From contig OZ365112.1 in assembly GCA_977030845.1 (NCBI GenBank), positions 5,766,001 through 5,830,000 of the forward strand: a stretch of DNA of 64,000 nucleotides. Direction: 5' to 3'. Below, in pieces: positions 33,301-56,772 of the stretch. The notes beneath the pieces were generated by a model, which worked only from the letters and a program-made list of their open reading frames with translations, was not told the origin of the DNA and made no database searches. Positions within the stretch are counted from its first letter, which is position 1. Each line of letters opens with the position of its first letter. Made by a program: the position numbers and the translations under genes. The DNA comes from Fimbriosthenelais zetlandica. Lineage: Eukaryota.

Positions 33301-33571
33301 TGATCTGATTGGTACGGTACCAAGATATAGTAATGGTTCTTCATACTCCCGCTGGCGATCATCAGGTAGCCGACATCTCCCTCCATCGCCCACTCATCCA
33401 GCCAAGCTATCAGCAGAATCGGTTGAATAAAATAAAGATTTTGCAAGATACCTGTACTGGATTTTATTTTTACATCTGCCTATGCTTTTAGACCTTAAGT
33501 AGAGAAAGAGCCGATTGGAGTGAACTGGCAAACCGGCTCAGCATTCCAAGCAATGTTGAAAAAAATTAATA

Positions 33572-36500
33572 TATGGTCGAATCTCATGAGTTTGGGGATT
33601 ACAAAATTCTGCATTTGCCGCCCAATATCTTGAAAAGGTTTTGGTATTATCTATTTTTATCACTATATCTGAATTCCCCGCATCGAAATCTATCAGGGGA
33701 ACCCCACTTTTGTGTACCTGCGACCAATATTAAGGAAATTACGGCCAAAAATCAACGTTTTGAGGGCGTTTTTTTGTTAAAAATTATTTTTTTCTATCTT
33801 TGCTTTTGTATATTAAAAAAATAATTATGGATGTGATGGTTTATAAGTCTTTTTGAGATTAAAAAATGCCTTGACTATACCTTTGACCATTTCCTTTGGA
33901 AATACGGTGGCTACTCTGTTCACAGGACTGAAAAACATTTTGGGGTAGTTTTCTGTAACGGGCGCGACATGCAAAACTGTTGCCATAGAAACATAATAAA
34001 TAATTGAGATATATATTCAATTCTATTCTCATTTAAAGCATGAATTACCGAAATATTCAGGATAGTGAAAAGGATGTTAATGTGCCTCCGTGTTTTGAAA
34101 CAGGCAACAAAAGAATGACTAAACGTCCTGTTTGGTGTAGTTTAAGCATAACGGGAGCGACCATGTTTAAGTAATTGCTGTCCTCAGTATATTTAAGATT
34201 AGTGAAAAATATCAATACCAGACTTAGAGCTATGTCTAATTTATGTATTCCATACAAAAAAATATTTTTATCATCACATCTTTTTCCAATATAGACTTAA
34301 TATATCAAAGAATAACGGGCGCGACATGCATAACGGGCGCGACATGCTGCCTGATTGTATGTGAAATCCATGCACAGTGAAGGCCTGCATGAAATGCCGC
34401 CCTACGCAGGCACACTACTTCATGTCAACCATAGCAAATTATGTTATGCGCCTAGAAAAATGACATAGAAGTACAGAATTTCCAATTATATCAATCAAAA
34501 AGGGAAATATTGAATTGTGGAATATTGTCCATCATTATATTTCAATGCTAGATATAAGCGGATACAAGTAACATTAGAGAGAGAAAAAATTAAAACAATA
34601 TTACATGTGTGTGAGCTTAAAATAGGGCATGTTCAAAGGCACGAAACATTTTTATAACCTTGTGTTTTGCTTTAGTCTTTGTGCTCAGGTTATCCATGTC
34701 GCGCCCGTTATGAGGAAAGTTTTATATTCAATCAATATAAATGATCAACAATTGTTGGACATGTTTTATAGGGGTTCCATTATAGGTATCGGGACATTCT
34801 TCCTGCTTCATCGCAGTACAAAATCCCCACTAACATGTCCTTATACATCAGTATTTTCTGCTTTGATACATGTTTTTGATCTAATGGTAACAATATACTC
34901 CAACCTATTGTGATTATCTTTGGAAGAAATATATTTATTTAAATAAAAGGTGGGACTTTTCATCTCATAAGTAGTTAATACAATGCATTATTGAACAGAT
35001 CCATTGGTTTTGCGCATTATGTCCATCTTTTCTAAGTGATTATACTGATTATTGTGGCCATGTCGCGCCCGTTATATGTATTACATTGTCTTGTTCAGTA
35101 CATCATTCATAGAGTGATGTAAATTCTATCAGGGAGAGTTGGAAGGGAGAGGGGGAGGTGGAATAGAGGAAAGGGAAGTGTGGAGGGTGATCTTGGAAGG
35201 AGGGAGAAGGGAGAGGGGGAGGAAGAATTGAGGAGGAAGAGATGGATGGTGGAGAGGCGGTGGTTGGGTGGGAGGGAGTGCAGGGGAAGAGGTTTTCTAG
35301 GGCCGGTGATCTAGGAAGGAGAGGGGAATGTGGGGTGGGGAGGAAGAACTGAGGGAGGGGAAGATGTGTAGGGTGGGGAAGTCGAGGGGAACGGGGTATA
35401 TTAGATTGGGTGGGTGTCATTTAGCACAGTTACAATGTTACACCAGTTTACCACTAAATAATTCCTCTAAAATTTCAGTTTAAATAATTCTCAAACATCA
35501 TCCAAGTCTAACCCTTCATGTAACAGTATCACTATATGAACCACGATATTTTAAATTATAAAAGGCCTATAATTTAAATTATAAAAGGCCTATAAGGCCT
35601 ATATAATAACTCAATGACTCAAAATACAGATTTTTTTTAGGGAAATGGTTTTCCCGGAGTGTGAGTTATACACCCGGGGTTATACATGTATACGAAAAAG
35701 GAAAAATAGTAAATTGGGAAAACGAATGACGAAGTTAATCCTTCACAGTTTCCTTATTTCTGATCGAATTTGTATAAAGTAAATTCATTTTATGATGTCA
35801 GATTCTTTTCATTAGGAAGGCAGATTATTTTTTCATTAGGAAGGCAGATTAATATTTCTGTTTTCTCCTTGGCCGATTGCATGGTAGCAGTCCAAAGCAA
35901 ATGGACCTCTTGAAACTTTTACTTCAAAATTTAATTATATTAAAGATAATATTAAAGTTTTAGTCAATATGTGATTTTTACATCAATATGGCCAAATTGA
36001 ATGGTTTTATATATTCATAGACGTTCTATGTCTATGATATATTCTACGAACAGTAACGGGCGCGACATGGAATTATTACACTCACAGATGAATAAGAAAA
36101 TGGATATGTATCGGAAACATAGGCAAAAAATGAGAGGAGCTCCTAAATGTGTCCAGTCAAGTTACCATCTCAAATATAGACTCTAAAATGACATGGTAAC
36201 AGAAATAGGAACTACCTCCTAAATTGAACATAATTATTACCTAAATAATATAAGATTTCCCCCCCAAAAAAGAACTGTAGCAAATGAAAATGTGTTTAGA
36301 ATTGTAGCACAAAAGTGAGAAAGTAAAAAGGACATAAAACAATTTTTCTATTTGATCATGGTACATCAGGGAATGTGAAATACATCCATACATTCAGTTA
36401 TGATAAAATTAATTGAAGTGTAACGGGCGCGACATGCCTCCTTAATTCCCATATAGAATATTGGCAAATACATGGATGAATTTAAGTTTTTAGCATCTAT

Positions 36501-36988
36501 AAGGTATTGACCTTCCTCATATAATCATGGAATTAAATTAATATAACACTAATTTTCTACTCGGTAAGCAAAACTGACGTGAAGTGATGTTACGCAGACC
36601 CAGGAATAGTGAAATCGTCTGTAAACTTCATAAAACCATATCATAGAATAAATTATGTCTTAGATTATAAAATTGAAGGTCAAATGCTTGTTTAAATCAT
36701 GTATTTCATTATTAAAGTGTACAAATGAGCGCGACTATAGAATATATTTAGTAAAATCTATATAACTCATTCAATAGCAGACCATGTCGCGCCCGTTACA
36801 TGGATTTCAAGGGTATTCTTTCATCAGTCTGCCCTATAGTTAATTTTAAAAATTAGTGTTCCCAACTTTCCACGGAATTAGGGCGAGGCATGCAGTTTTC
36901 ATTGTTATTCATGATTTAATAATAATAGGTAAATTATTTTTTGCCATATCTGAGATTGTAATCCCCAAACTCATGAGATTCGACCATA
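33572..36988. mobile_element. 3.4-kb non-autonomous DNA transposon with perfect 33-bp TIRs and TA (or TATA) target duplication
   Basis: TATGGTCGAATCTCATGAGTTTGGGGATTACAA at 33572-33604 and its exact reverse complement at 36956-36988, with TA on both outer flanks. No transposase ORF inside; eight internal copies of TAACGGGCGCGACATG. Confidence 0.85.
33956..36798. repeat. Dispersed exact 16-bp motif TAACGGGCGCGACATG, 8 copies plus 1 variant
   Basis: Plus orientation at 33956, 34313, 34331, 36054, 36421; minus orientation at 34695, 35059, 36783; variant TAACGGGAGCGACCATG at 34149. Confidence 0.95.
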
Positions 36989-37090
36989 TACAGACCCACC
37001 GCCCCCTACTCCCAAAAACAAAGCCAACATCAACACAGCTAAGCCGTATATAATGTGTAGTGATGCAGGAATCAGTGAAAAGTGTTTTGC

Positions 37091-37158
37091 AATACAGGGA
37101 ATCGAACCTCAATCTGTCGCGTTCCAGTCCAGTGTCTTACCTCTAGACTACCTGTCTT
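37091..37158 (-). pseudogene. Degenerate tRNA-derived sequence (copy A of 40391-40460)
   Basis: Minus strand GGTAGTCTAGAGGTAAGAC...GAGGTTCGATTCCC retains the D-arm/A-box and the B-box. The anticodon and T stems are decayed. Confidence 0.6.
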
Positions 37159-37239
37159 ATAGCTTGCTACCCTACACTACATGCGCCGAATTTAGCCTGA
37201 TCCGCCCTAGCCAAGGCTAAGTCACAATATAATTTTTTG

Positions 37240-38100
37240 GCCCCGACCACTCCCCGGTCCCCAACCACCCCAAACCCCAAGTCTAGGCCTACCACCGGCA
37301 CTCCCATCAACTCCCTCCAAACACCCCAGTCCGATTTGAAACCGCTAACCTGTCAAAATACCTTGGAATAGGCCACTGTGTTGGTACTGCCCATAGGCTC
37401 CAATGTTAAAAATTATTTAGCCCCCCGGACCCCTCCCAGGCCCCCAACCTCCACCCCGAGCCCCATGCCTGCCCCCGGCACCCACCCCAACTCTCTCCTA
37501 AAAATTCAGCCCGTTTCAAAAAGGCTAACATGTCTAAATCTATTGAATTCTGCAAAAGTGTCCCGCCCATAGGCGCAATGTTAAAAATCACTCACGATTA
37601 CAGGAATGTGTGCTACAAAGCCGATTTACCAGTCCACTACAATCGGCTTTTACTCTACCTAATACATATTATTTTCACTCAAGACCACGGTTATGTATAA
37701 CTTATGACATCTACTGATAAATCTCAAAAGATCGAAGACGAAAGACGTGGAAAAATCCGATTTCTGCGAAGTTGACAAGTCGGCCGTGCGTATACAGGCC
37801 TATAATTTGGCCTTTTAAAAACCTTAACAGCGCCCTCTCACTAAAAGTCGAATAAGTTGAATAACTCTGTAAATAATCGTTCTAAAATTACAATTCAAAC
37901 GGATTATTCTTAGTTGGAAGCATCTCCAAGTATCCATATGGTTTTTGTTCAAGTAAACTTTATTTAAAATTTCGACTTTTGAAAATGCAGCCAAATGAGG
38001 TCTTTAGCATTGGACTCTATGGAAGAACAAGCCAGAGCGTTTGAAGCGACCCCGAGATTTATAGCGGCAAAAAGATGAACTACACTACTATGATCTACCC
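37240..38100. repeat. Composite repeat unit, copy A (direct repeat of ~40540-41389)
   Basis: 37331-38100 aligns by eye to 40621-41389 at a constant offset of ~3290 bp, with long identical stretches. Confidence 0.9.
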
Positions 38101-39204
38101 AAGGATACAACGCTCTCAACTCCTGGCTGATATCAGAGTGGGTGGGATTGTTTGGTATGGGGAGTGGGTCAGATTTGTGCTGGGATTTAGGGATGGGGCG
38201 GGGGGGCTAAATAACATCGAGCAAAATTGTATGTGTTTTTTTTTTATTTCTTTATTTTCTCGAAAACTAAGGGGTCTAAAATTAGGGGAAATCTTAGTTG
38301 AGAGCCGAAGTATGGTAGTACACACTTTTTGAATGAATAAAATTGATTTAAAACTTGAGATTTTGAAAATGTGCTGATTTTTCGGGGTTGACACCGCCAA
38401 TGCTAAATCGTCTAATAACTTCACTGAAACTGGATAGAGAGAGCACTGGTAGTTCACCTAGTCGCCGCTGCAACTCGGGTCGCCACTTTCGCGCTTGCTG
38501 CTTCTTCCATTGGGATCAATGCTGAGGGTGAAAATTCGGTCAATTTTGAAAATCGAAAGTTTTAAATCAACTTTATTGATTCAAAAGGTATGTCCTAACC
38601 TAGTTCGGCTCCCAACTAAGAATATTCCGAAGAGATCGTAATTTTAGGCCCGGTAGTTTTCGAGAAATTAGAAAAATAAAAAAATCGTCATTTTTATGAA
38701 CTACTCACAATCGATCGAGGCGCGCATAATTAAGGCCACTAGAGGAACTAAGCTCCATTCAGTTGAAGTTGGCCTTTTAGTTTCGTATTTACTTAGATCA
38801 CCAACTAGACATTATCCCACAGAGGTAAAAATACGCAGTGATATACTTTTTCGATGTCCGAGTTTTGACACTGATTTGACAAGTCCTTGTCCTCCTATAT
38901 TTGATGTTTAGTTTCATTCCAGTCGTGAGTTTCGGAGAGTGGGTGGGCGGGTGGTCCAAGTTACTGCGCACTGAAGCATGAGAGGGGGTAGGTGCATGTC
39001 CCCAGCTTGTCATCTGTGCATAGGCCTATACCTTTGCATAGCATACCAATACATAACGCTTCAGTGGTCAGAGAGCTTCAAGAGGCCACGGGTGGGAGGT
39101 TCGCAGAGTCACATTGAGGGGCACTGAAGGGGTGTGGCATTGGATACAGAGAACGGAGAGAGCGGAGAATGAAGAGGACAGAGGAAGAGAGACGCCGCAA
39201 GGCA

Positions 39205-39206
<2 letters not shown>

Positions 39207-39281
<75 letters not shown>
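39207..39281. repeat. (AT)n microsatellite at the 5' junction of the Penelope-like element
   Basis: Perfect AT run of ~37 units. Confidence 0.95.
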
Positions 39282-39286
<5 letters not shown>

Positions 39287-40299
39287 GATGAGTAGATTTC
39301 TGAGTGAAGTGATATTCCTCTCAGAGATAAAAGACTATTGGAGCTCCACCAATACCTTCTCAAACGGAAATACCCAACCACCCTCATAGATGCAGGAATA
39401 GAAAAAGCTAAATCACTTCGCATGGAGGAATTACGTTCTCCAAACACTGAGAGGGTTCAAGAAAATACAAACACTTTAACTTTTGTCAACACAATGAACC
39501 CAAAACACTGTAACATGTTCAAAACCCTAAAAGACAACATGACCATCATGGAAAACAATGACATTATGAAACAGATTATGAACAACACAACATTTATTAA
39601 TGGCAAGAGGCAAGCCCCCAATCTTAAAAAACTACTAACTAGGGCGAAGTTTGAGAACACCTGCCAAACTGTAGGTGTTACTAAATGTGGTCAAGCAAGA
39701 TGCCTTGCATGTAAATATATCATAGAAGGCGAATCATTTAATTTCCATAAAGCTAATTTCAACTTCAAAGTACAGTCAGCACTTAACTGTAACTCAAGCA
39801 ATGTATTATATGTGCTAATTTGCCAAGGTTGTAAACAATATTACATTGGTAAGACTAAAACTGCTCTGAGATTTAGACTGAATAACCACAGATCTCACGT
39901 AAACAACCCACAAAATGCTATTCTTTATTGTAGTCGCCATTTTGCTGCATGTGCCTCTCAACATGAAATTAAAATGAGAGTCATGCCATTTTATCAAGTC
40001 CATTCGTCAAATGATGACCTATTAACTGTCAAAGAACATTATTTCATTGAAAAGCTAAAACCAAGCCTAAACAGGGAATAATAACGAAGCCAGTAACTAT
40101 AGCTTCCTGGGCTATGACGCCCCATTGTAGCTTTCTAACATGTAAAAATGGACTATATGTCAAAGCCTGTATATTACAATGTGTATATATATGTAATTTA
40201 TTTCATACTTTAGCAGAAACTGGTGTGATGATCGCTTAAAAGCGAGAAAGTACTTCCACAATAAATAATGAAAAGCACATTTTTGCCATTCATTTTTTG
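39282..40299 (+). mobile_element. 5'-truncated Penelope-like retroelement (Neptune-type): RT C-terminus/linker, Cys-rich motif and GIY-YIG endonuclease
   Basis: Open frame 39308-40081 (ORF track 39338-40081) contains RDKRLLELHQYLLKRKYP, RQAPNLKKLLTRAKF, KCGQARCLAC, LNCNSSNVLYVLICQGCKQYYIGKTKTALRFRLNNHRSHV and LTVKEHYFIEKLKPSLNRE. These are typical PLE GIY-YIG features; the Cys-rich linker marks the Neptune group. No RT catalytic core is present. Confidence 0.9.
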
Positions 40300-40324: not shown

Positions 40325-40390
40325 CTCCTCTCATCAGCAACTCAAACAACCAAAGCCAAAATCAACACTCTAAGCAGCGAAAAGTGATTT

Positions 40391-40460
40391 ACAAGACCGG
40401 GATTCGAACCCCGGTCTCTCGCACTCCAGGCGAGAGTCTTACCTCTAGACTACCACGCTC
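40391..40460 (-). pseudogene. tRNA-derived (tRNA-Pro-like body, GGA in anticodon position) Pol III-type sequence; SINE-like head or tRNA pseudogene
   Basis: Minus strand GAGCGTGGTAGTCTAGAGGTAAGACTCTCGCCTGGAGTGCGAGAGACCGGGGTTCGAATCCCGGTCTTGT. D arm GTCT/AGAC and anticodon arm CTCGC/GCGAG pair perfectly and the TTCGAAT T-loop is present, but the acceptor stem is poorly paired. Confidence 0.75.
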
Positions 40461-40539
40461 ACACACACAATCTGCCTTTCAGGTCATTGCAGGACACTCC
40501 CTCAAATTTGAAGGCTCAATCACAATGTTTATAATTAGC

Positions 40540-41389
40540 TCGCCCCCCGGGCCCCTCCCCGTCCCCCAACCCCATGTCCACCCTCCAGCGGTCCCATCAA
40601 CCCCCTCCAAAAACCTCAGTCCGATTTCAAACGGCTAACCTGTTAAAATCCCTTGGAATAGGCCACTGTGTTGGTACTGCCCATAGGCTCCAATGTTAAA
40701 AATTATTTAGCCCCCCGGACCCCTCCCAGGCCCCCAACCTCCACCCCGAGCCCCATGTCTACCCCCGGCACCCACCCCAACTCCCTCCTAAAAATCCAGC
40801 CCGATTCGAAAAGGCTAACATGTCTAAATCTATTGAATTCTGCAAAAGTGTCCCGCCCATAGGCGCAATGTTAAAAATCACTCACGATTACAGGAATGTG
40901 TGCTACAAAGCCGATTTACCAGTCCACTACAATCGGCTTTTACTCTACCTAATACATATTATTTTCACTCAAGACCACGGTTATGTGTAACTTATGACCT
41001 CTACTAATAAATCTCAAAAGAGCGGAGATGAAAGACGTGGAAAACCTCGATTTTTGCGAAGTTGACAAATCGGCCGCGCGTATACAGGCCTATAATTTGG
41101 CCTTTTAAAAACCTTAACAGCGCCCTCTCACTAAAAGTCGAAAAAGTTGAATAACTCTGTAAATAATAGGTCTAAAATTACAATTCAAACGGATTATTCT
41201 TAGTTGGAAGCATCTCCAAGTATCCATGTGGTTTTTGATCAATTAAACCTTATTTAAAATTTCGATTTTTGAAAATGATACCAATTTGAGGTCTTAGCAT
41301 TGGACTCTATGGGAGGAGGAAGCCGAGCGACCGAAGCGACCCCAAATTTCCAGCGGCAGAAAGGTGAACTATTCTACTATGATCTACCC
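40540..41389. repeat. Composite repeat unit, copy B
   Basis: Direct repeat of 37240-38100. The downstream block 41746-41865 also repeats 39055-39190. Confidence 0.9.
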
Positions 41390-42206
41390 AACCCACCGAG
41401 AAGGGAGTAGAGAGCATTGGCGAGATTATAGTGCTGTAGTTCACCGATTCGCCGCTGGAAATTTCGGGTCGCTTCAACCGCGCTAGCTTGCTCTTCCATA
41501 GAGTTCAATGCTACAGACATCAAATTGAGTTCATTTTCAAAATCCGAAATTTTAAATCAATTTTCTCGCTTCAAAAACCTGGCCACTATTTAGAATACCT
41601 CACAACTAAGGAAAATCCGTTTAGTTTGTATTTTTAGACCCCTTAATTGCGGAGATATTCAACCTTTCAAAAATCGAGCTGCAAAGGATCATGGGAGGAG
41701 GCAAACTTGGAGAGAAAATTGGCCAGAAATAGCCTCAACTTTTTCAACGCATCAGTGGTCAGAGAGCTTCAAGAGGCCACGGGTGGGAGGTTTGCAGAGC
41801 CAGGGGGCACTGAAGGGGCGTGGCATTGGACACGGAGAAGGAGAGCACGGAGAAGGAAGAAGACAGAAAAAATATGGCAATGCCTTTTATTTCTTTTATT
41901 TCTCGAGAACTACTGGGCCTAAAATTACCGGTACAGTCTAAACGGAAAAATGTCTGATTCCATAATTATAGTTCCACTGTGGTACAGCAGAAGCCCGAGG
42001 CGGCGGCAGCAGAAGACGTTATAAGAAAGTGTTGTTATAAATGAGTCTGTATATGTGTCATTTTCGGGATATGATATTATGAAAATGCCAACCATTTATG
42101 CATATCAAATAAGACTAGATAGGCATATATCGATAGAACAGCGAAATGTATCACCGGTCTCCTCATATTTGATGAATGGTGCTGTATATTAGGCCTATTA
42201 TAGCAA

Positions 42207-50800: not shown

Positions 50801-51748
50801 AGGATTGTCTGGGTTCGCGTCTCAAAACACCAGAAAGTGGGCCAGAACTTGTCACGTACAATAGGCATGTGATCCCAGAAGAACGTATGCATGGCATGGT
50901 TACATGCCAAGACAGGACGCTGTCAAAAGAAATAGATAGGACAATGAAATGGTTCAGAAAATGGGGTGTGGCTACCCTAGGGCCTATAGGCCTACATGAA
51001 TGAATGACTGGGTTGGTGAATGGATNNNNNNNNNNNNNNNNNNNNNNNNNNNNNNNNNNNNNNNNNNNNNNNNNNNNNNNNNNNNNNNNNNNNNNNNNNN
51101 NNNNNNNNNNNNNNNNNNNNNNNNNNNNNNNNNNNNNNNNNNNNNNNNNNNNNNNAGGAATGAGTTATGTAATGGATGGANNNNNNNNNNNNNNNNNNNN
51201 NNNNNNNNNNNNNNNNNNNNNNNNNNNNNNNNNNNNNNNNNNNNNNNNNNNNNNNNNNNNNNNNNNNNNNNNNNNNNNNNNNNNNNNNNNNNNNNNNNNN
51301 NNNNNNNNTGAAAGTTTAAAAAATGTGTTGTTTTTGTTTTTTTTTGCTTTAATTAAAAATGGATGAGTACGGTATGCCTACAGGTATAGAAAAAATAGGT
51401 GATAACCTAAACCTGAATGAATATGAATGAATGAACAAAGCAGGCCTACACAATGACAAAGTAATTCAAAATGCAGAAATTGATGTAGATCTAACAAAAT
51501 TCAAGGGCACAGAATGTGCATATTGACGAATCTACCATGTTGGCCTATACTAGGTCTACCCTAATGAAATTAGTAGACATGAATGATAGATCTAGTTGAG
51601 CCATTCTTCTAATTGCATAATAAAATAGTAGATTTATACGTACCTTGACCACATTCAGTAGATAGTAGGTGACAAATGCTGTCGCTGAACCGATAATGAA
51701 TGAAACCATAGGGTTCCTTTTCATGATATCAATCTCCAGGCCTAACAT
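47848..51748 (-). CDS. ABHD3: Alpha/beta hydrolase of the ABHD1/2/3 family (ABHD1/3-like phospholipase), 10 coding exons, 400 aa
   Basis: Exons 51748-51644, 50919-50759, 50482-50367, 50153-50093, 49961-49916, 49575-49463, 49168-48995, 48891-48837, 48598-48433, 48053-47848; all GT-AG, 1203 nt in frame. Has an N-terminal hydrophobic anchor, IALDW, LILPGLTG, VVFNNRG, nucleophile GVSLGG, IREFDD, Asp in NSADDVFSP and His in GGHIGFLEG. An in-frame TGA lies upstream of the first ATG. Confidence 0.92.
49591..49670. repeat. 15-bp tandem repeat (AATACAGGTAGAACT)x3 plus decayed copies, in an ABHD intron next to the acceptor
   Basis: Units at 49591, 49606 and 49621, then diverged units to ~49670. Confidence 0.85.
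51026..51308. other. Assembly gaps (N runs 51026-51155 and 51181-51308) in ABHD intron 1, probably a (GAAT/GGAT)-type microsatellite
   Basis: The N runs are flanked by TGAATGAATGA and ATGGATGGA. Confidence 0.85.

Positions 51749-52856: not shown

Positions 52857-56772
<3,916 letters not shown>

What the first reader, a model, noticed from the sequence alone, without database searches (positions are those of the whole stretch)
33572..36988. Non-coding transposon carrying a phased lattice of identical 16-bp motifs (~364 bp apart) with unique spacers and flipping orientation
Seen: perfect 33-bp TIRs enclose 3.4 kb with no transposase ORF. Inside, TAACGGGCGCGACATG occurs exactly eight times, orientations + + + - - + + -. 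Start-to-start gaps are 357, (18), 364, 364, 995, 367 and 362 bp, regardless of orientation. I see no similarity between the AT-rich spacers or the motif flanks. The 995-bp gap equals 2 x 364 plus ~270 bp, about the size of the GA-rich block at ~35130-35410. Two cassettes bounded by inverted motifs have almost the same length (34331-34710 = 380 bp; 36421-36798 = 378 bp). Inference: ordinary tandem duplication would not leave a CpG-rich motif invariant while spacers are unrelated but constant in length. Options are a binding-site lattice phased to two nucleosomes (~2 x 182 bp, with a variant motif near the half-period at 34149), an ancient satellite keeping only a CENP-B-box-like element, or recombination sites that invert or shuffle fixed-length cassettes. 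I know of no described element with this layout.
Basis: partly seen in the sequence, partly recalled or inferred. Interest (0 to 1): 0.85.

Follow-up and report, generated by a model that had tools for sequence, protein, structure and literature searches.

The report
Transposon carrying evenly spaced identical 16-mers
A 3.4-kb non-coding jumping gene in an invertebrate genome holds eight letter-perfect copies of one 16-base motif about 364 bases apart, pointing either way, with unrelated DNA between them; the pattern is real and matches no described element, but it was seen at one locus only and its purpose is unknown.

Summary
TAACGGGCGCGACATG occurs exactly eight times (+ + + - - + + -), all inside a 3.4-kb non-coding element. 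That element is bounded by a perfect 35-nt inverted repeat with TA at each outer end. Five start-to-start gaps are 357-367 bp (simulation P about 1e-5). The spacer from the left TIR to the first motif (351 bp) has the same length as the spacers between motifs.

Spacers show no homology, conserved columns, RNA structure or coding signal. They are AT-rich and as CpG-depleted as the host DNA, while all 24 CpGs in the motifs are intact. Copies are either perfect or absent, apart from one 2-edit variant at half phase. No relic motif lies at the node predicted inside the 979-bp gap. Together these results argue strongly against a diverged 364-bp satellite.

My best reading (about 0.3) is that the 16-mers are protein-recognition sites, each copied into place on a grid of about two nucleosome lengths. 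Rivals are recombination cassettes, a composite of miniature elements sharing ends, and an artefact.

No other copy could be retrieved: no sequencing runs were listed and every public collection came back empty. The decisive cross-copy tests are therefore still open. Unverified earlier notes of this scan mention other transposon-borne motif arrays in this genome.

The parts
33570..33604 (+). Left terminal inverted repeat (35 nt, including the outer TA, which may be the target-site duplication)
   Evidence: I1, 100% complementary; only two copies in the window
36956..36990 (-). Right terminal inverted repeat (35 nt, including the outer TA)
33605..33955 (.). Spacer S0, 351 bp, between the left TIR and motif 1. 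It has the same length class as the spacers between motifs.
33956..33971 (+). Motif copy M1 (TAACGGGCGCGACATG), preceded by TG
34149..34165 (+). Variant motif TAACGGGAGCGACCATG (2 edits). It sits at half phase and splits spacer S1 into 177 + 147 bp.
34313..34346 (+). Motif doublet M2-CA-M3: two direct copies 18 bp apart
   Evidence: period 18, 2.0 copies
34329..34712 (.). Cassette A: 348-bp unique spacer between convergent M3 and M4, with 18-nt perfect inverted ends (CATAACGGG...)
   Evidence: I9
34695..34710 (-). Motif copy M4
35059..35074 (-). Motif copy M5, exactly 364 bp after M4
35075..36053 (.). Long spacer S5, 979 bp, the only one between divergent motifs. It holds a GA-rich degenerate minisatellite (about 35130-35410) and two short tandem duplications (35546-35595 and 35806-35858). 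No relic motif is present.
36054..36069 (+). Motif copy M6
36419..36800 (.). Cassette B: 346-bp unique spacer between convergent M7 and M8, with 18-nt perfect inverted ends (TGTAACGGG...)
   Evidence: I7
36799..36955 (.). Spacer S8, 157 bp (about half length), between M8 and the right TIR

Best explanation
This is a real, recently inserted, non-autonomous TIR DNA transposon, TA-flanked and therefore probably Tc1/mariner-like. Its non-coding cargo is unique, host-like, AT-rich DNA.

The same asymmetric 16-bp protein-recognition site has been copied into that DNA at separate nodes of a grid of about 364 bp. The repeated unit is the site, not a 364-bp monomer. Each node carries the site in either orientation. 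One node carries two copies, one half-node carries a mutated copy, and the left TIR itself occupies a node.

I infer that a sequence-specific DNA-binding protein occupies these sites and forms a regularly spaced nucleoprotein array. The protein could belong to the element's mobilising machinery or be a host chromatin factor. The period is about two nucleosome repeats, so each spacer could hold two nucleosomes.

Shown: the anatomy, its statistics, the absence of spacer homology, and the youth or maintenance of the sites. Inferred: that a protein binds the sites, that the ruler is chromatin, and how the sites were written.
For: Eight perfect copies with sharp edges and none elsewhere in the window.

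The spacing is regular at P about 1e-5 and does not depend on orientation. M3-M4-M5 are exactly 364 and 364 bp apart across an orientation flip. This fits sites placed at nodes better than inversion of segments with arbitrary breakpoints.

The spacer from the left TIR to M1 (351 bp) falls in the same 341-351 class.

Spacers are unrelated, non-coding, without excess RNA structure, and compositionally continuous across nodes.

Spacers are as CpG-depleted as the host (o/e 0.50 versus 0.60), while all 24 motif CpGs are intact. The sites are therefore younger than, or protected relative to, the DNA around them.

Copies are perfect or absent, which points to copy-and-paste rather than decay of a repeat.

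From established knowledge, not tested here: TAACGG is the canonical Myb recognition element YAAC(G/T)G. Several transposon families also carry internal transposase-binding motifs in both orientations (Ac AAACGG, En/Spm 12-mer, the direct repeats of IR/DR Tc1-like elements).
Against: No known mechanism inserts a 16-mer without a target-site duplication, and none is visible at the motif flanks.

Internal transposase-binding sites in known families lie tens of bp apart in subterminal regions, not 364 bp apart across the whole element.

The 16-mer does not convincingly resemble this element's own TIR. The only shared piece is a 7-mer, ATGGTCG, with the variant copy, read from the sequence.

Transcription-factor sites normally tolerate degeneracy. 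Eight perfect copies suggest templated copying more than selection.

The model does not explain why both convergent pairs have 2 extra symmetric bases (18-nt inverted ends; chance about 1/256).

There is only one locus, and no binding, chromatin or population data.
Confidence: 0.3

Rival explanations
1. Composite of miniature TA-flanked elements sharing a 14-16-bp terminal inverted repeat (TA|ACGGGCGCGACATG). The convergent pairs are complete mini-elements. One is nested 2 bp inside the left end of another, and the unpaired motifs are one-ended remnants.
For: Both convergent pairs have 18-nt perfect inverted ends whose outer 2 bp differ between the two cassettes (CA...TG and TG...CA). This is what a palindromic TA target would give, and chance is about 1/256.

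Read as brackets, the orientations nest: M2(M3M4 )M5 and M7M8. Removing the inner unit leaves an outer unit of about 384 bp, close to 380 and 378 (coordinates).

From established knowledge, MITE families moved by one transposase can share TIRs while having unrelated interiors.
Against: The interiors are unrelated yet equal in length to within 1%, which copy-and-paste families do not produce.

Independent insertions would not abut so that every interval is 341-351 bp. S4 lies between two 'right' ends. M1 and M6 have no partner. The motif does not occur anywhere else in the 64 kb.
Confidence: 0.2
2. Recombination-site array. The 16-mer is the site of a site-specific recombinase or transposase that inverts, deletes, shuffles or acquires fixed-length cassettes. 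It would be a natural counterpart of bacterial shufflons or the synthetic Polylox barcode.
For: The sites are identical, sharp-edged and in both orientations, and they bound unrelated cassettes.

Crossovers inside the sites would preserve the grid through inversions, as seen for M3-M4-M5.

[quoted passage not shown] That its spacers are unique and of fixed length is my recollection of the design and was not checked in that paper.
Against: The 16-mer lacks the dyad symmetry of tyrosine or serine recombinase core sites (3 of 8 position pairs, read from the sequence).

No recombinase ORF lies in the element.

Recombination does not explain why cassettes are equal in length, nor the direct doublet M2-CA-M3. 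No hybrid or rearranged sites are seen, and no second copy was available to compare order.
Confidence: 0.12
3. Assembly or library artefact, or engineered DNA. The 16-mer would be a linker, barcode or primer joined to size-defined fragments.
For: Sixteen bases is a common barcode length. Constant fragment size, a constant linker in either orientation, a linker dimer (M2-CA-M3) and fragments with the linker at both ends all look like ligation or amplification products. No reads could be laid on the locus to check it.
Against: The array sits inside a perfect 35-nt TIR pair with TA flanks.

The spacers look like host DNA: AT-rich, CpG o/e 0.50, and carrying a GA-rich minisatellite and short tandem duplications.

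The spacers match nothing else in the window, nor plasmids or phages. The motif matches no sequence printed in any searched paper.

A length spread of about 1% is tighter than physical size selection gives.
Confidence: 0.07
4. Ancient 364-bp satellite in which only a functional box (CENP-B-box-like) survived while the monomers diverged beyond recognition.
For: The period is constant. Box-only conservation across otherwise divergent satellites is known from the literature (CENP-B box; this is my recollection, not tested here).
Against: No residual similarity in pairwise or column-wise tests, and no TRF period.

Length conserved to 1% is implausible once substitutions are saturated. Motif orientation flips in phase. 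No graded decay of motif copies is seen. The perfect TIRs and intact CpGs indicate youth.
Confidence: 0.03

Closest known systems
Non-autonomous TIR DNA transposons with internal arrays (MITE-like elements with central tandem repeats; foldback elements)
   Same: Perfect TIRs, TA at both outer ends, no coding capacity, and an internal periodic feature.
   Different: In known cases the internal units are homologous tandem monomers in one orientation. Here only a 16-mer repeats, in both orientations, and the 341-351-bp spacers are unrelated.
Internal or subterminal transposase-binding motifs (Ac AAACGG hexamers, En/Spm 12-bp motif, direct repeats of IR/DR Tc1-like elements such as Sleeping Beauty and Bari)
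   Same: A short asymmetric motif repeated in both orientations inside a transposon, with non-conserved DNA between copies.
   Different: Those motifs are degenerate, cluster within about 250 bp of the ends, and in IR/DR elements resemble the terminal site. Here the copies are perfect, span the whole element at a 364-bp period, and do not resemble the TIR.
Shufflons and the synthetic Polylox cassette
   Same: Identical sites in mixed orientation separating unique DNA blocks. [quoted passage not shown]
   Different: No recombinase gene, no dyad-symmetric site, and no evidence of rearrangement. Orientation is not strictly alternating. Shufflons are bacterial and Polylox is man-made.
CRISPR arrays and REP/BIME arrays of bacteria
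   Same: Identical short repeats with unique spacers of constant length (CRISPR). Regularly spaced repeats in alternating orientation (BIMEs; PMC2817692, abstract seen).
   Different: The host is an animal. The spacers are about ten times longer. The orientation is mixed, unlike CRISPR. The motif is not palindromic, unlike REP. There is no associated gene.
gypsy Su(Hw) insulator and other transposon-borne binding-site clusters
   Same: A transposon carrying a cluster of sites for one DNA-binding protein, separated by AT-rich DNA (from memory).
   Different: Those sites are degenerate and tens of bp apart. Here they are identical and 364 bp apart.

Membership tests
Non-autonomous TIR DNA transposon (TA-target, Tc1/mariner-like) | Terminal inverted repeats | tested here: met
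   35-nt, 100% complementary, at 33570-33604 / 36956-36990
Non-autonomous TIR DNA transposon (TA-target, Tc1/mariner-like) | Target-site duplication (TA) | tested here: inconclusive
   TA (or TATA) is present at both ends, but it is palindromic and extends the inverted repeat. No empty paralogous site exists in the window.
Non-autonomous TIR DNA transposon (TA-target, Tc1/mariner-like) | Multiple genomic copies and an autonomous partner sharing the TIR | not testable with these tools
   Only one copy in the window. No sequencing runs were listed. The TIR is absent from metagenome and viral contigs. The ORF that starts in the TIR has no homologue.
Non-autonomous TIR DNA transposon (TA-target, Tc1/mariner-like) | No transposase coding capacity | tested here: met
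   Longest ORF is 105 aa and low-complexity. No significant Pfam match; the two matches to one 61-aa ORF have E 0.076 and 0.12, below the curated cut-offs.
Satellite / tandem repeat | Homologous monomers arranged head to tail | tested here: not met
   No TRF period of 364. Spacer pairs give z of at most 4.0, mean 0.22. No conserved columns. Orientation is mixed.
Site-specific inversion system (shufflon-like) | Recombination sites in inverted orientation bounding the segments | tested here: met
   5 plus-strand and 3 minus-strand copies. Two segments are bounded by convergent sites.
Site-specific inversion system (shufflon-like) | Site with inverted recombinase-binding arms around a core | tested here: not met
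   Only 3 of 8 position pairs of the 16-mer are self-complementary (central GCGC plus A2/T15), read from the sequence.
Site-specific inversion system (shufflon-like) | Variable order or orientation of segments between copies or cells | not testable with these tools
   No reads and no other copies were available.
Site-specific inversion system (shufflon-like) | Linked recombinase gene | tested here: not met
   There are no ORFs with Pfam matches in the element. The nearest enzyme-like ORF is a GIY-YIG domain at 39338-40078, outside the element.
MITE family (for the 380-bp cassettes) | TIRs plus TA flanks | tested here: met
   18-nt perfect inverted ends at 34329-34712 and 36419-36800
MITE family (for the 380-bp cassettes) | Homologous interiors among copies | tested here: not met
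   S3 and S7, and all other spacer pairs, are unrelated in both orientations. Genome-wide copies could not be tested.
IR/DR Tc1-like element | Internal direct repeats resembling the terminal transposase-binding site | tested here: not met
   No 11-mer of the TIR recurs inside the element beyond one 1-mismatch chance hit. The motif and the TIR share only ATGGTCG, and only through the variant copy.
Known structured RNA genes (Rfam, tRNA) | Match to a covariance model, or excess folding energy | tested here: not met
   No Rfam match in the element at E<=1. No tRNA. Spacer z-scores range from -2.1 to +1.5.

The most novel reading that the evidence does not exclude
An animal transposon carries a natural cassette array. 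A 16-bp site would be used by a dedicated recombinase or transposase to acquire, invert or shuffle DNA cassettes of fixed length (about 348 bp, dinucleosome-sized). This would be a eukaryotic counterpart of shufflons, integrons and CRISPR-type repeat-spacer logic.
Probability: 0.1. Interest if true: 0.95.

Novelty: new variant of a known kind. Interest (0 to 1): 0.62.

Why it matters
If the lattice is functional, it would show that a transposon can carry a built-in, regularly spaced array of recognition sites on otherwise unique DNA. That would make it a mobile module able to impose phased chromatin, insulation or recombination wherever it lands. It would also imply a mechanism that writes short sites at a fixed distance, and I know of none in animals.

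Even a mundane outcome would be informative. A composite of end-sharing miniature elements would define a family with a strict length rule and no sequence conservation, which is itself unusual.

The finding is cheap to resolve. One BLAST of the full assembly with the 16-mer and the TIR separates most of the models.

Tried and rejected
Cryptic spacer homology: rejected by pairwise local alignments against shuffles, anchored column conservation and TRF.

Relic motif at the 'missing' node of the 979-bp gap: none found.

Structured RNA or ribozyme units such as retrozymes, hammerheads, snoRNAs or tRNAs: no Rfam or ARAGORN hits and no excess folding energy.

Decayed transposase or captured coding fragments: no ORF longer than 105 aa and no significant Pfam match.

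Spacers copied from elsewhere in the window: only one weak 92-bp match at 73% identity.

Empty paralogous insertion site: the neighbouring 1-kb repeat starts 80 bp beyond the element, so there is none.

Vector, plasmid or phage origin: no matches.

Other copies: none found by any route.
- No sequencing runs were listed, either for the element or for the RACK1 region, so read laying could not be used.
- Motif-pair pattern: absent from metagenome, viral and prokaryote-genome contigs.
- TIR 22-mer: absent from metagenome and viral contigs.
- Single 16-mer: absent from viral contigs.
- Ten element ORFs are not in the 15-billion-protein collection.
- The ORF that starts in the TIR has no homologue.

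Literature: no paper prints the 16-mer or the TIR. The 12-mer hits are chance matches in unrelated papers.

Earlier scan notes: nothing on this locus or sequence.

CTCF-like reading of the motif: rejected by eye. It shares only GCGCCC and lacks the CCCTGGTGG part.

Nodes as compositional change points: not supported, except at the GA-rich block.
Full report
**1. What is there**

The sequence at 33400-37200 contains exactly eight perfect copies of TAACGGGCGCGACATG. They lie at 33956+, 34313+, 34331+, 34695-, 35059-, 36054+, 36421+ and 36783-. No further match exists in the 64-kb window even with three mismatches, against 0.11 expected by chance. An edit-distance scan adds one near copy, TAACGGGAGCGACCATG at 34149-34165 (two edits). 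All weaker matches occur at the background rate.

The array lies inside a 3,421-bp element bounded by a 35-nt, 100% complementary inverted repeat at 33570-33604 / 36956-36990. This repeat occurs only at these two places in the window. Its outermost bases are TA on both sides. The TA cannot be proven to be a duplication, because it is palindromic and no empty site is available.

**2. Geometry**

Start-to-start gaps are 357, 18, 364, 364, 995, 367 and 362 bp. In a simulation of eight random sites in the interior, five gaps agreeing within +-5 bp occurred about once in 100,000 trials. The spacers between motifs measure 341, 2, 348, 348, 979, 351 and 346 bp.

- The spacer from the inner edge of the left TIR to M1 is 351 bp. 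The TIR therefore behaves as a node of the grid, while the right-hand spacer is 157 bp, about half a period.
- The motif has sharp edges. Oriented on the motif, the only extension is a purine before it and C or G after it. Within +-175 nt, the columns are no more conserved than in shuffles (14 versus 15.2+-3.6 columns at 6 of 8 or better).
- Both convergent pairs have 18-nt perfect inverted ends. They read CATAACGGG... at 34329-34712 and TGTAACGGG... at 36419-36800. The two extra bases are symmetric within a cassette but differ between cassettes (chance about 1/256).
- The only divergent pair (M5-, M6+) encloses the only long spacer.

**3. The spacers**

All 72 oriented pairwise local alignments among nine spacer pieces give z-scores against shuffles of at most 4.0, with a mean of 0.22. 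TRF finds no 364-bp period. The spacers match nothing else in the window beyond one weak 92-bp hit.

They contain no ORF over 105 aa and no significant Pfam match; one 61-aa ORF gave two matches at E 0.076 and 0.12, below the curated cut-offs. There is no Rfam family or tRNA. No spacer folds better than dinucleotide shuffles on either strand (z from -2.1 to +1.5).

They are AT-rich (33.7% GC, against 41.5% in the flanks) and as CpG-depleted as the host DNA (o/e 0.50 against 0.60). All 24 CpGs inside the motifs are intact. Dinucleotide composition does not change at the nodes, except next to the GA-rich block.

The 979-bp spacer contains a GA-rich degenerate minisatellite and two short tandem duplications.

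**4. What this excludes**

A diverged 364-bp satellite is very unlikely, for four reasons:
- No homology remains.
- Length is conserved to about 1%, which could not survive saturating divergence.
- Orientation flips stay in exact phase.
- Motif copies are perfect or absent rather than graded.

The perfect TIRs and the intact, hypermutable CpGs indicate that the element and its sites are young or actively maintained. The spacers, in contrast, look like old host-type DNA. It follows that the 16-mer, not a 364-bp monomer, is the unit that was copied. Something must also have acted as a ruler of about 348-364 bp.

**5. What it most likely is**

I favour, at about 0.3, a transposon-borne lattice of recognition sites for one sequence-specific DNA-binding protein. 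Each site would have been written separately at a node of the grid.

This description accommodates several features:
- Orientation is independent of phase.
- One node carries a doublet and another site lies at half phase.
- One stretch has no site.
- The TIR occupies a node.
- Composition is continuous across nodes.

The period equals about two nucleosome repeats, which is the only natural physical ruler I can name.

From memory, as leads only: TAACGG is the canonical Myb recognition element. CGCGACA resembles half of the palindromic site reported for the BED-finger protein hDREF/ZBED1. Several transposon families carry internal transposase-binding motifs in both orientations.

The model has clear weaknesses:
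- No known process inserts a 16-mer without a target duplication.
- Known internal binding motifs are degenerate and subterminal.
- The motif does not resemble this element's TIR.
- The 18-nt symmetric ends of the two cassettes are left unexplained.

**6. Rivals**

- **Composite of miniature TA-flanked elements sharing a 14-16-bp TIR (0.2).** It explains the 18-nt ends and a neat nesting: the M2..M5 unit minus the inner unit is about 384 bp, against 380 and 378. It does not explain equal lengths with unrelated interiors, nor a gap-free lattice.
- **Recombination cassettes, shufflon- or Polylox-like (0.12; design described in PMC9237189).** It explains identical sharp sites and phase-preserving inversions. 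Against it, the site lacks dyad symmetry, there is no recombinase gene, and no rearrangement could be observed.
- **Artefact or engineered DNA (0.07).** It would explain a linker-like 16-mer, a 'linker dimer' and double-ended fragments. It is contradicted by the TIR/TA boundaries, the host-like and CpG-depleted spacers with minisatellites, the 1% length spread, and the absence of vector similarity.
- **Ancient satellite (0.03).**
- The remaining probability goes to mechanisms I have not thought of.

**7. Search for relatives**

The other searches were also empty:
- The motif-pair pattern is absent from metagenome, viral and prokaryote-genome contigs.
- The TIR is absent from metagenome and viral contigs.
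- The single 16-mer is absent from viral contigs.
- Ten ORFs of the element are not in the protein collection, and the ORF that starts in the TIR has no homologue.
- No paper prints the motif or the TIR.

Earlier notes of this scan hold nothing on this locus. They do list other transposon-borne motif arrays in the same genome (s1-217067, s1-214127, s1-191771). Their sequences were not visible and they remain unchecked.

**8. Verdict**

The layout matches no element I know or could find. I class it as a new variant of a known kind: a non-autonomous TIR transposon with an unprecedented interior. The evidence is one locus, and the mechanism is inferred. A whole-genome BLAST and a check against raw long reads would settle most of the alternatives.

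Noticed in passing
window 39338-40078 (+): A 247-aa ORF with a GIY-YIG catalytic domain (Pfam E 6.5e-05). It may be the endonuclease part of a Penelope-like retroelement lying about 2.4 kb from the element.
   Followed up: no
window 37070-38102 and 40372-41391: Two copies of a roughly 1-kb repeat, 86% identical. The second carries a tRNA-Ser(GGA) call at 40390-40458 on the minus strand. The first has a tRNA-like stretch at about 37090-37170 that ARAGORN does not call. It may be a tRNA-derived SINE or a larger repeat, and it starts 80 bp from the right TIR.
   Followed up: partly
window 39207-39281: A perfect 74-75-bp palindrome (self reverse-complement match at 100%).
   Followed up: no
window 41142-41667: A stretch of about 530 bp that matches its own reverse complement at 73% identity. 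It looks like a foldback and adjoins the second copy of the 1-kb repeat.
   Followed up: no
window 53270-53975 and 55116-56055: Two sets of 4-5 identical 13-mers in one orientation at 138-465-bp spacing. They are a useful contrast: short functional RNA genes with unrelated flanks.
   Followed up: no
window 34689-34711 versus 34312-34334: The 6 nt on the CATG side of M4 (GATAAC in motif orientation) mimic the start of a second motif, as in the M2-CA-M3 doublet (23-nt inverted match at 96%, I3). This may be a truncated second doublet, or it may be chance.
   Followed up: partly
window 51026-51155 and 51181-51308: Two runs of N (130 and 128 bases).
   Followed up: no
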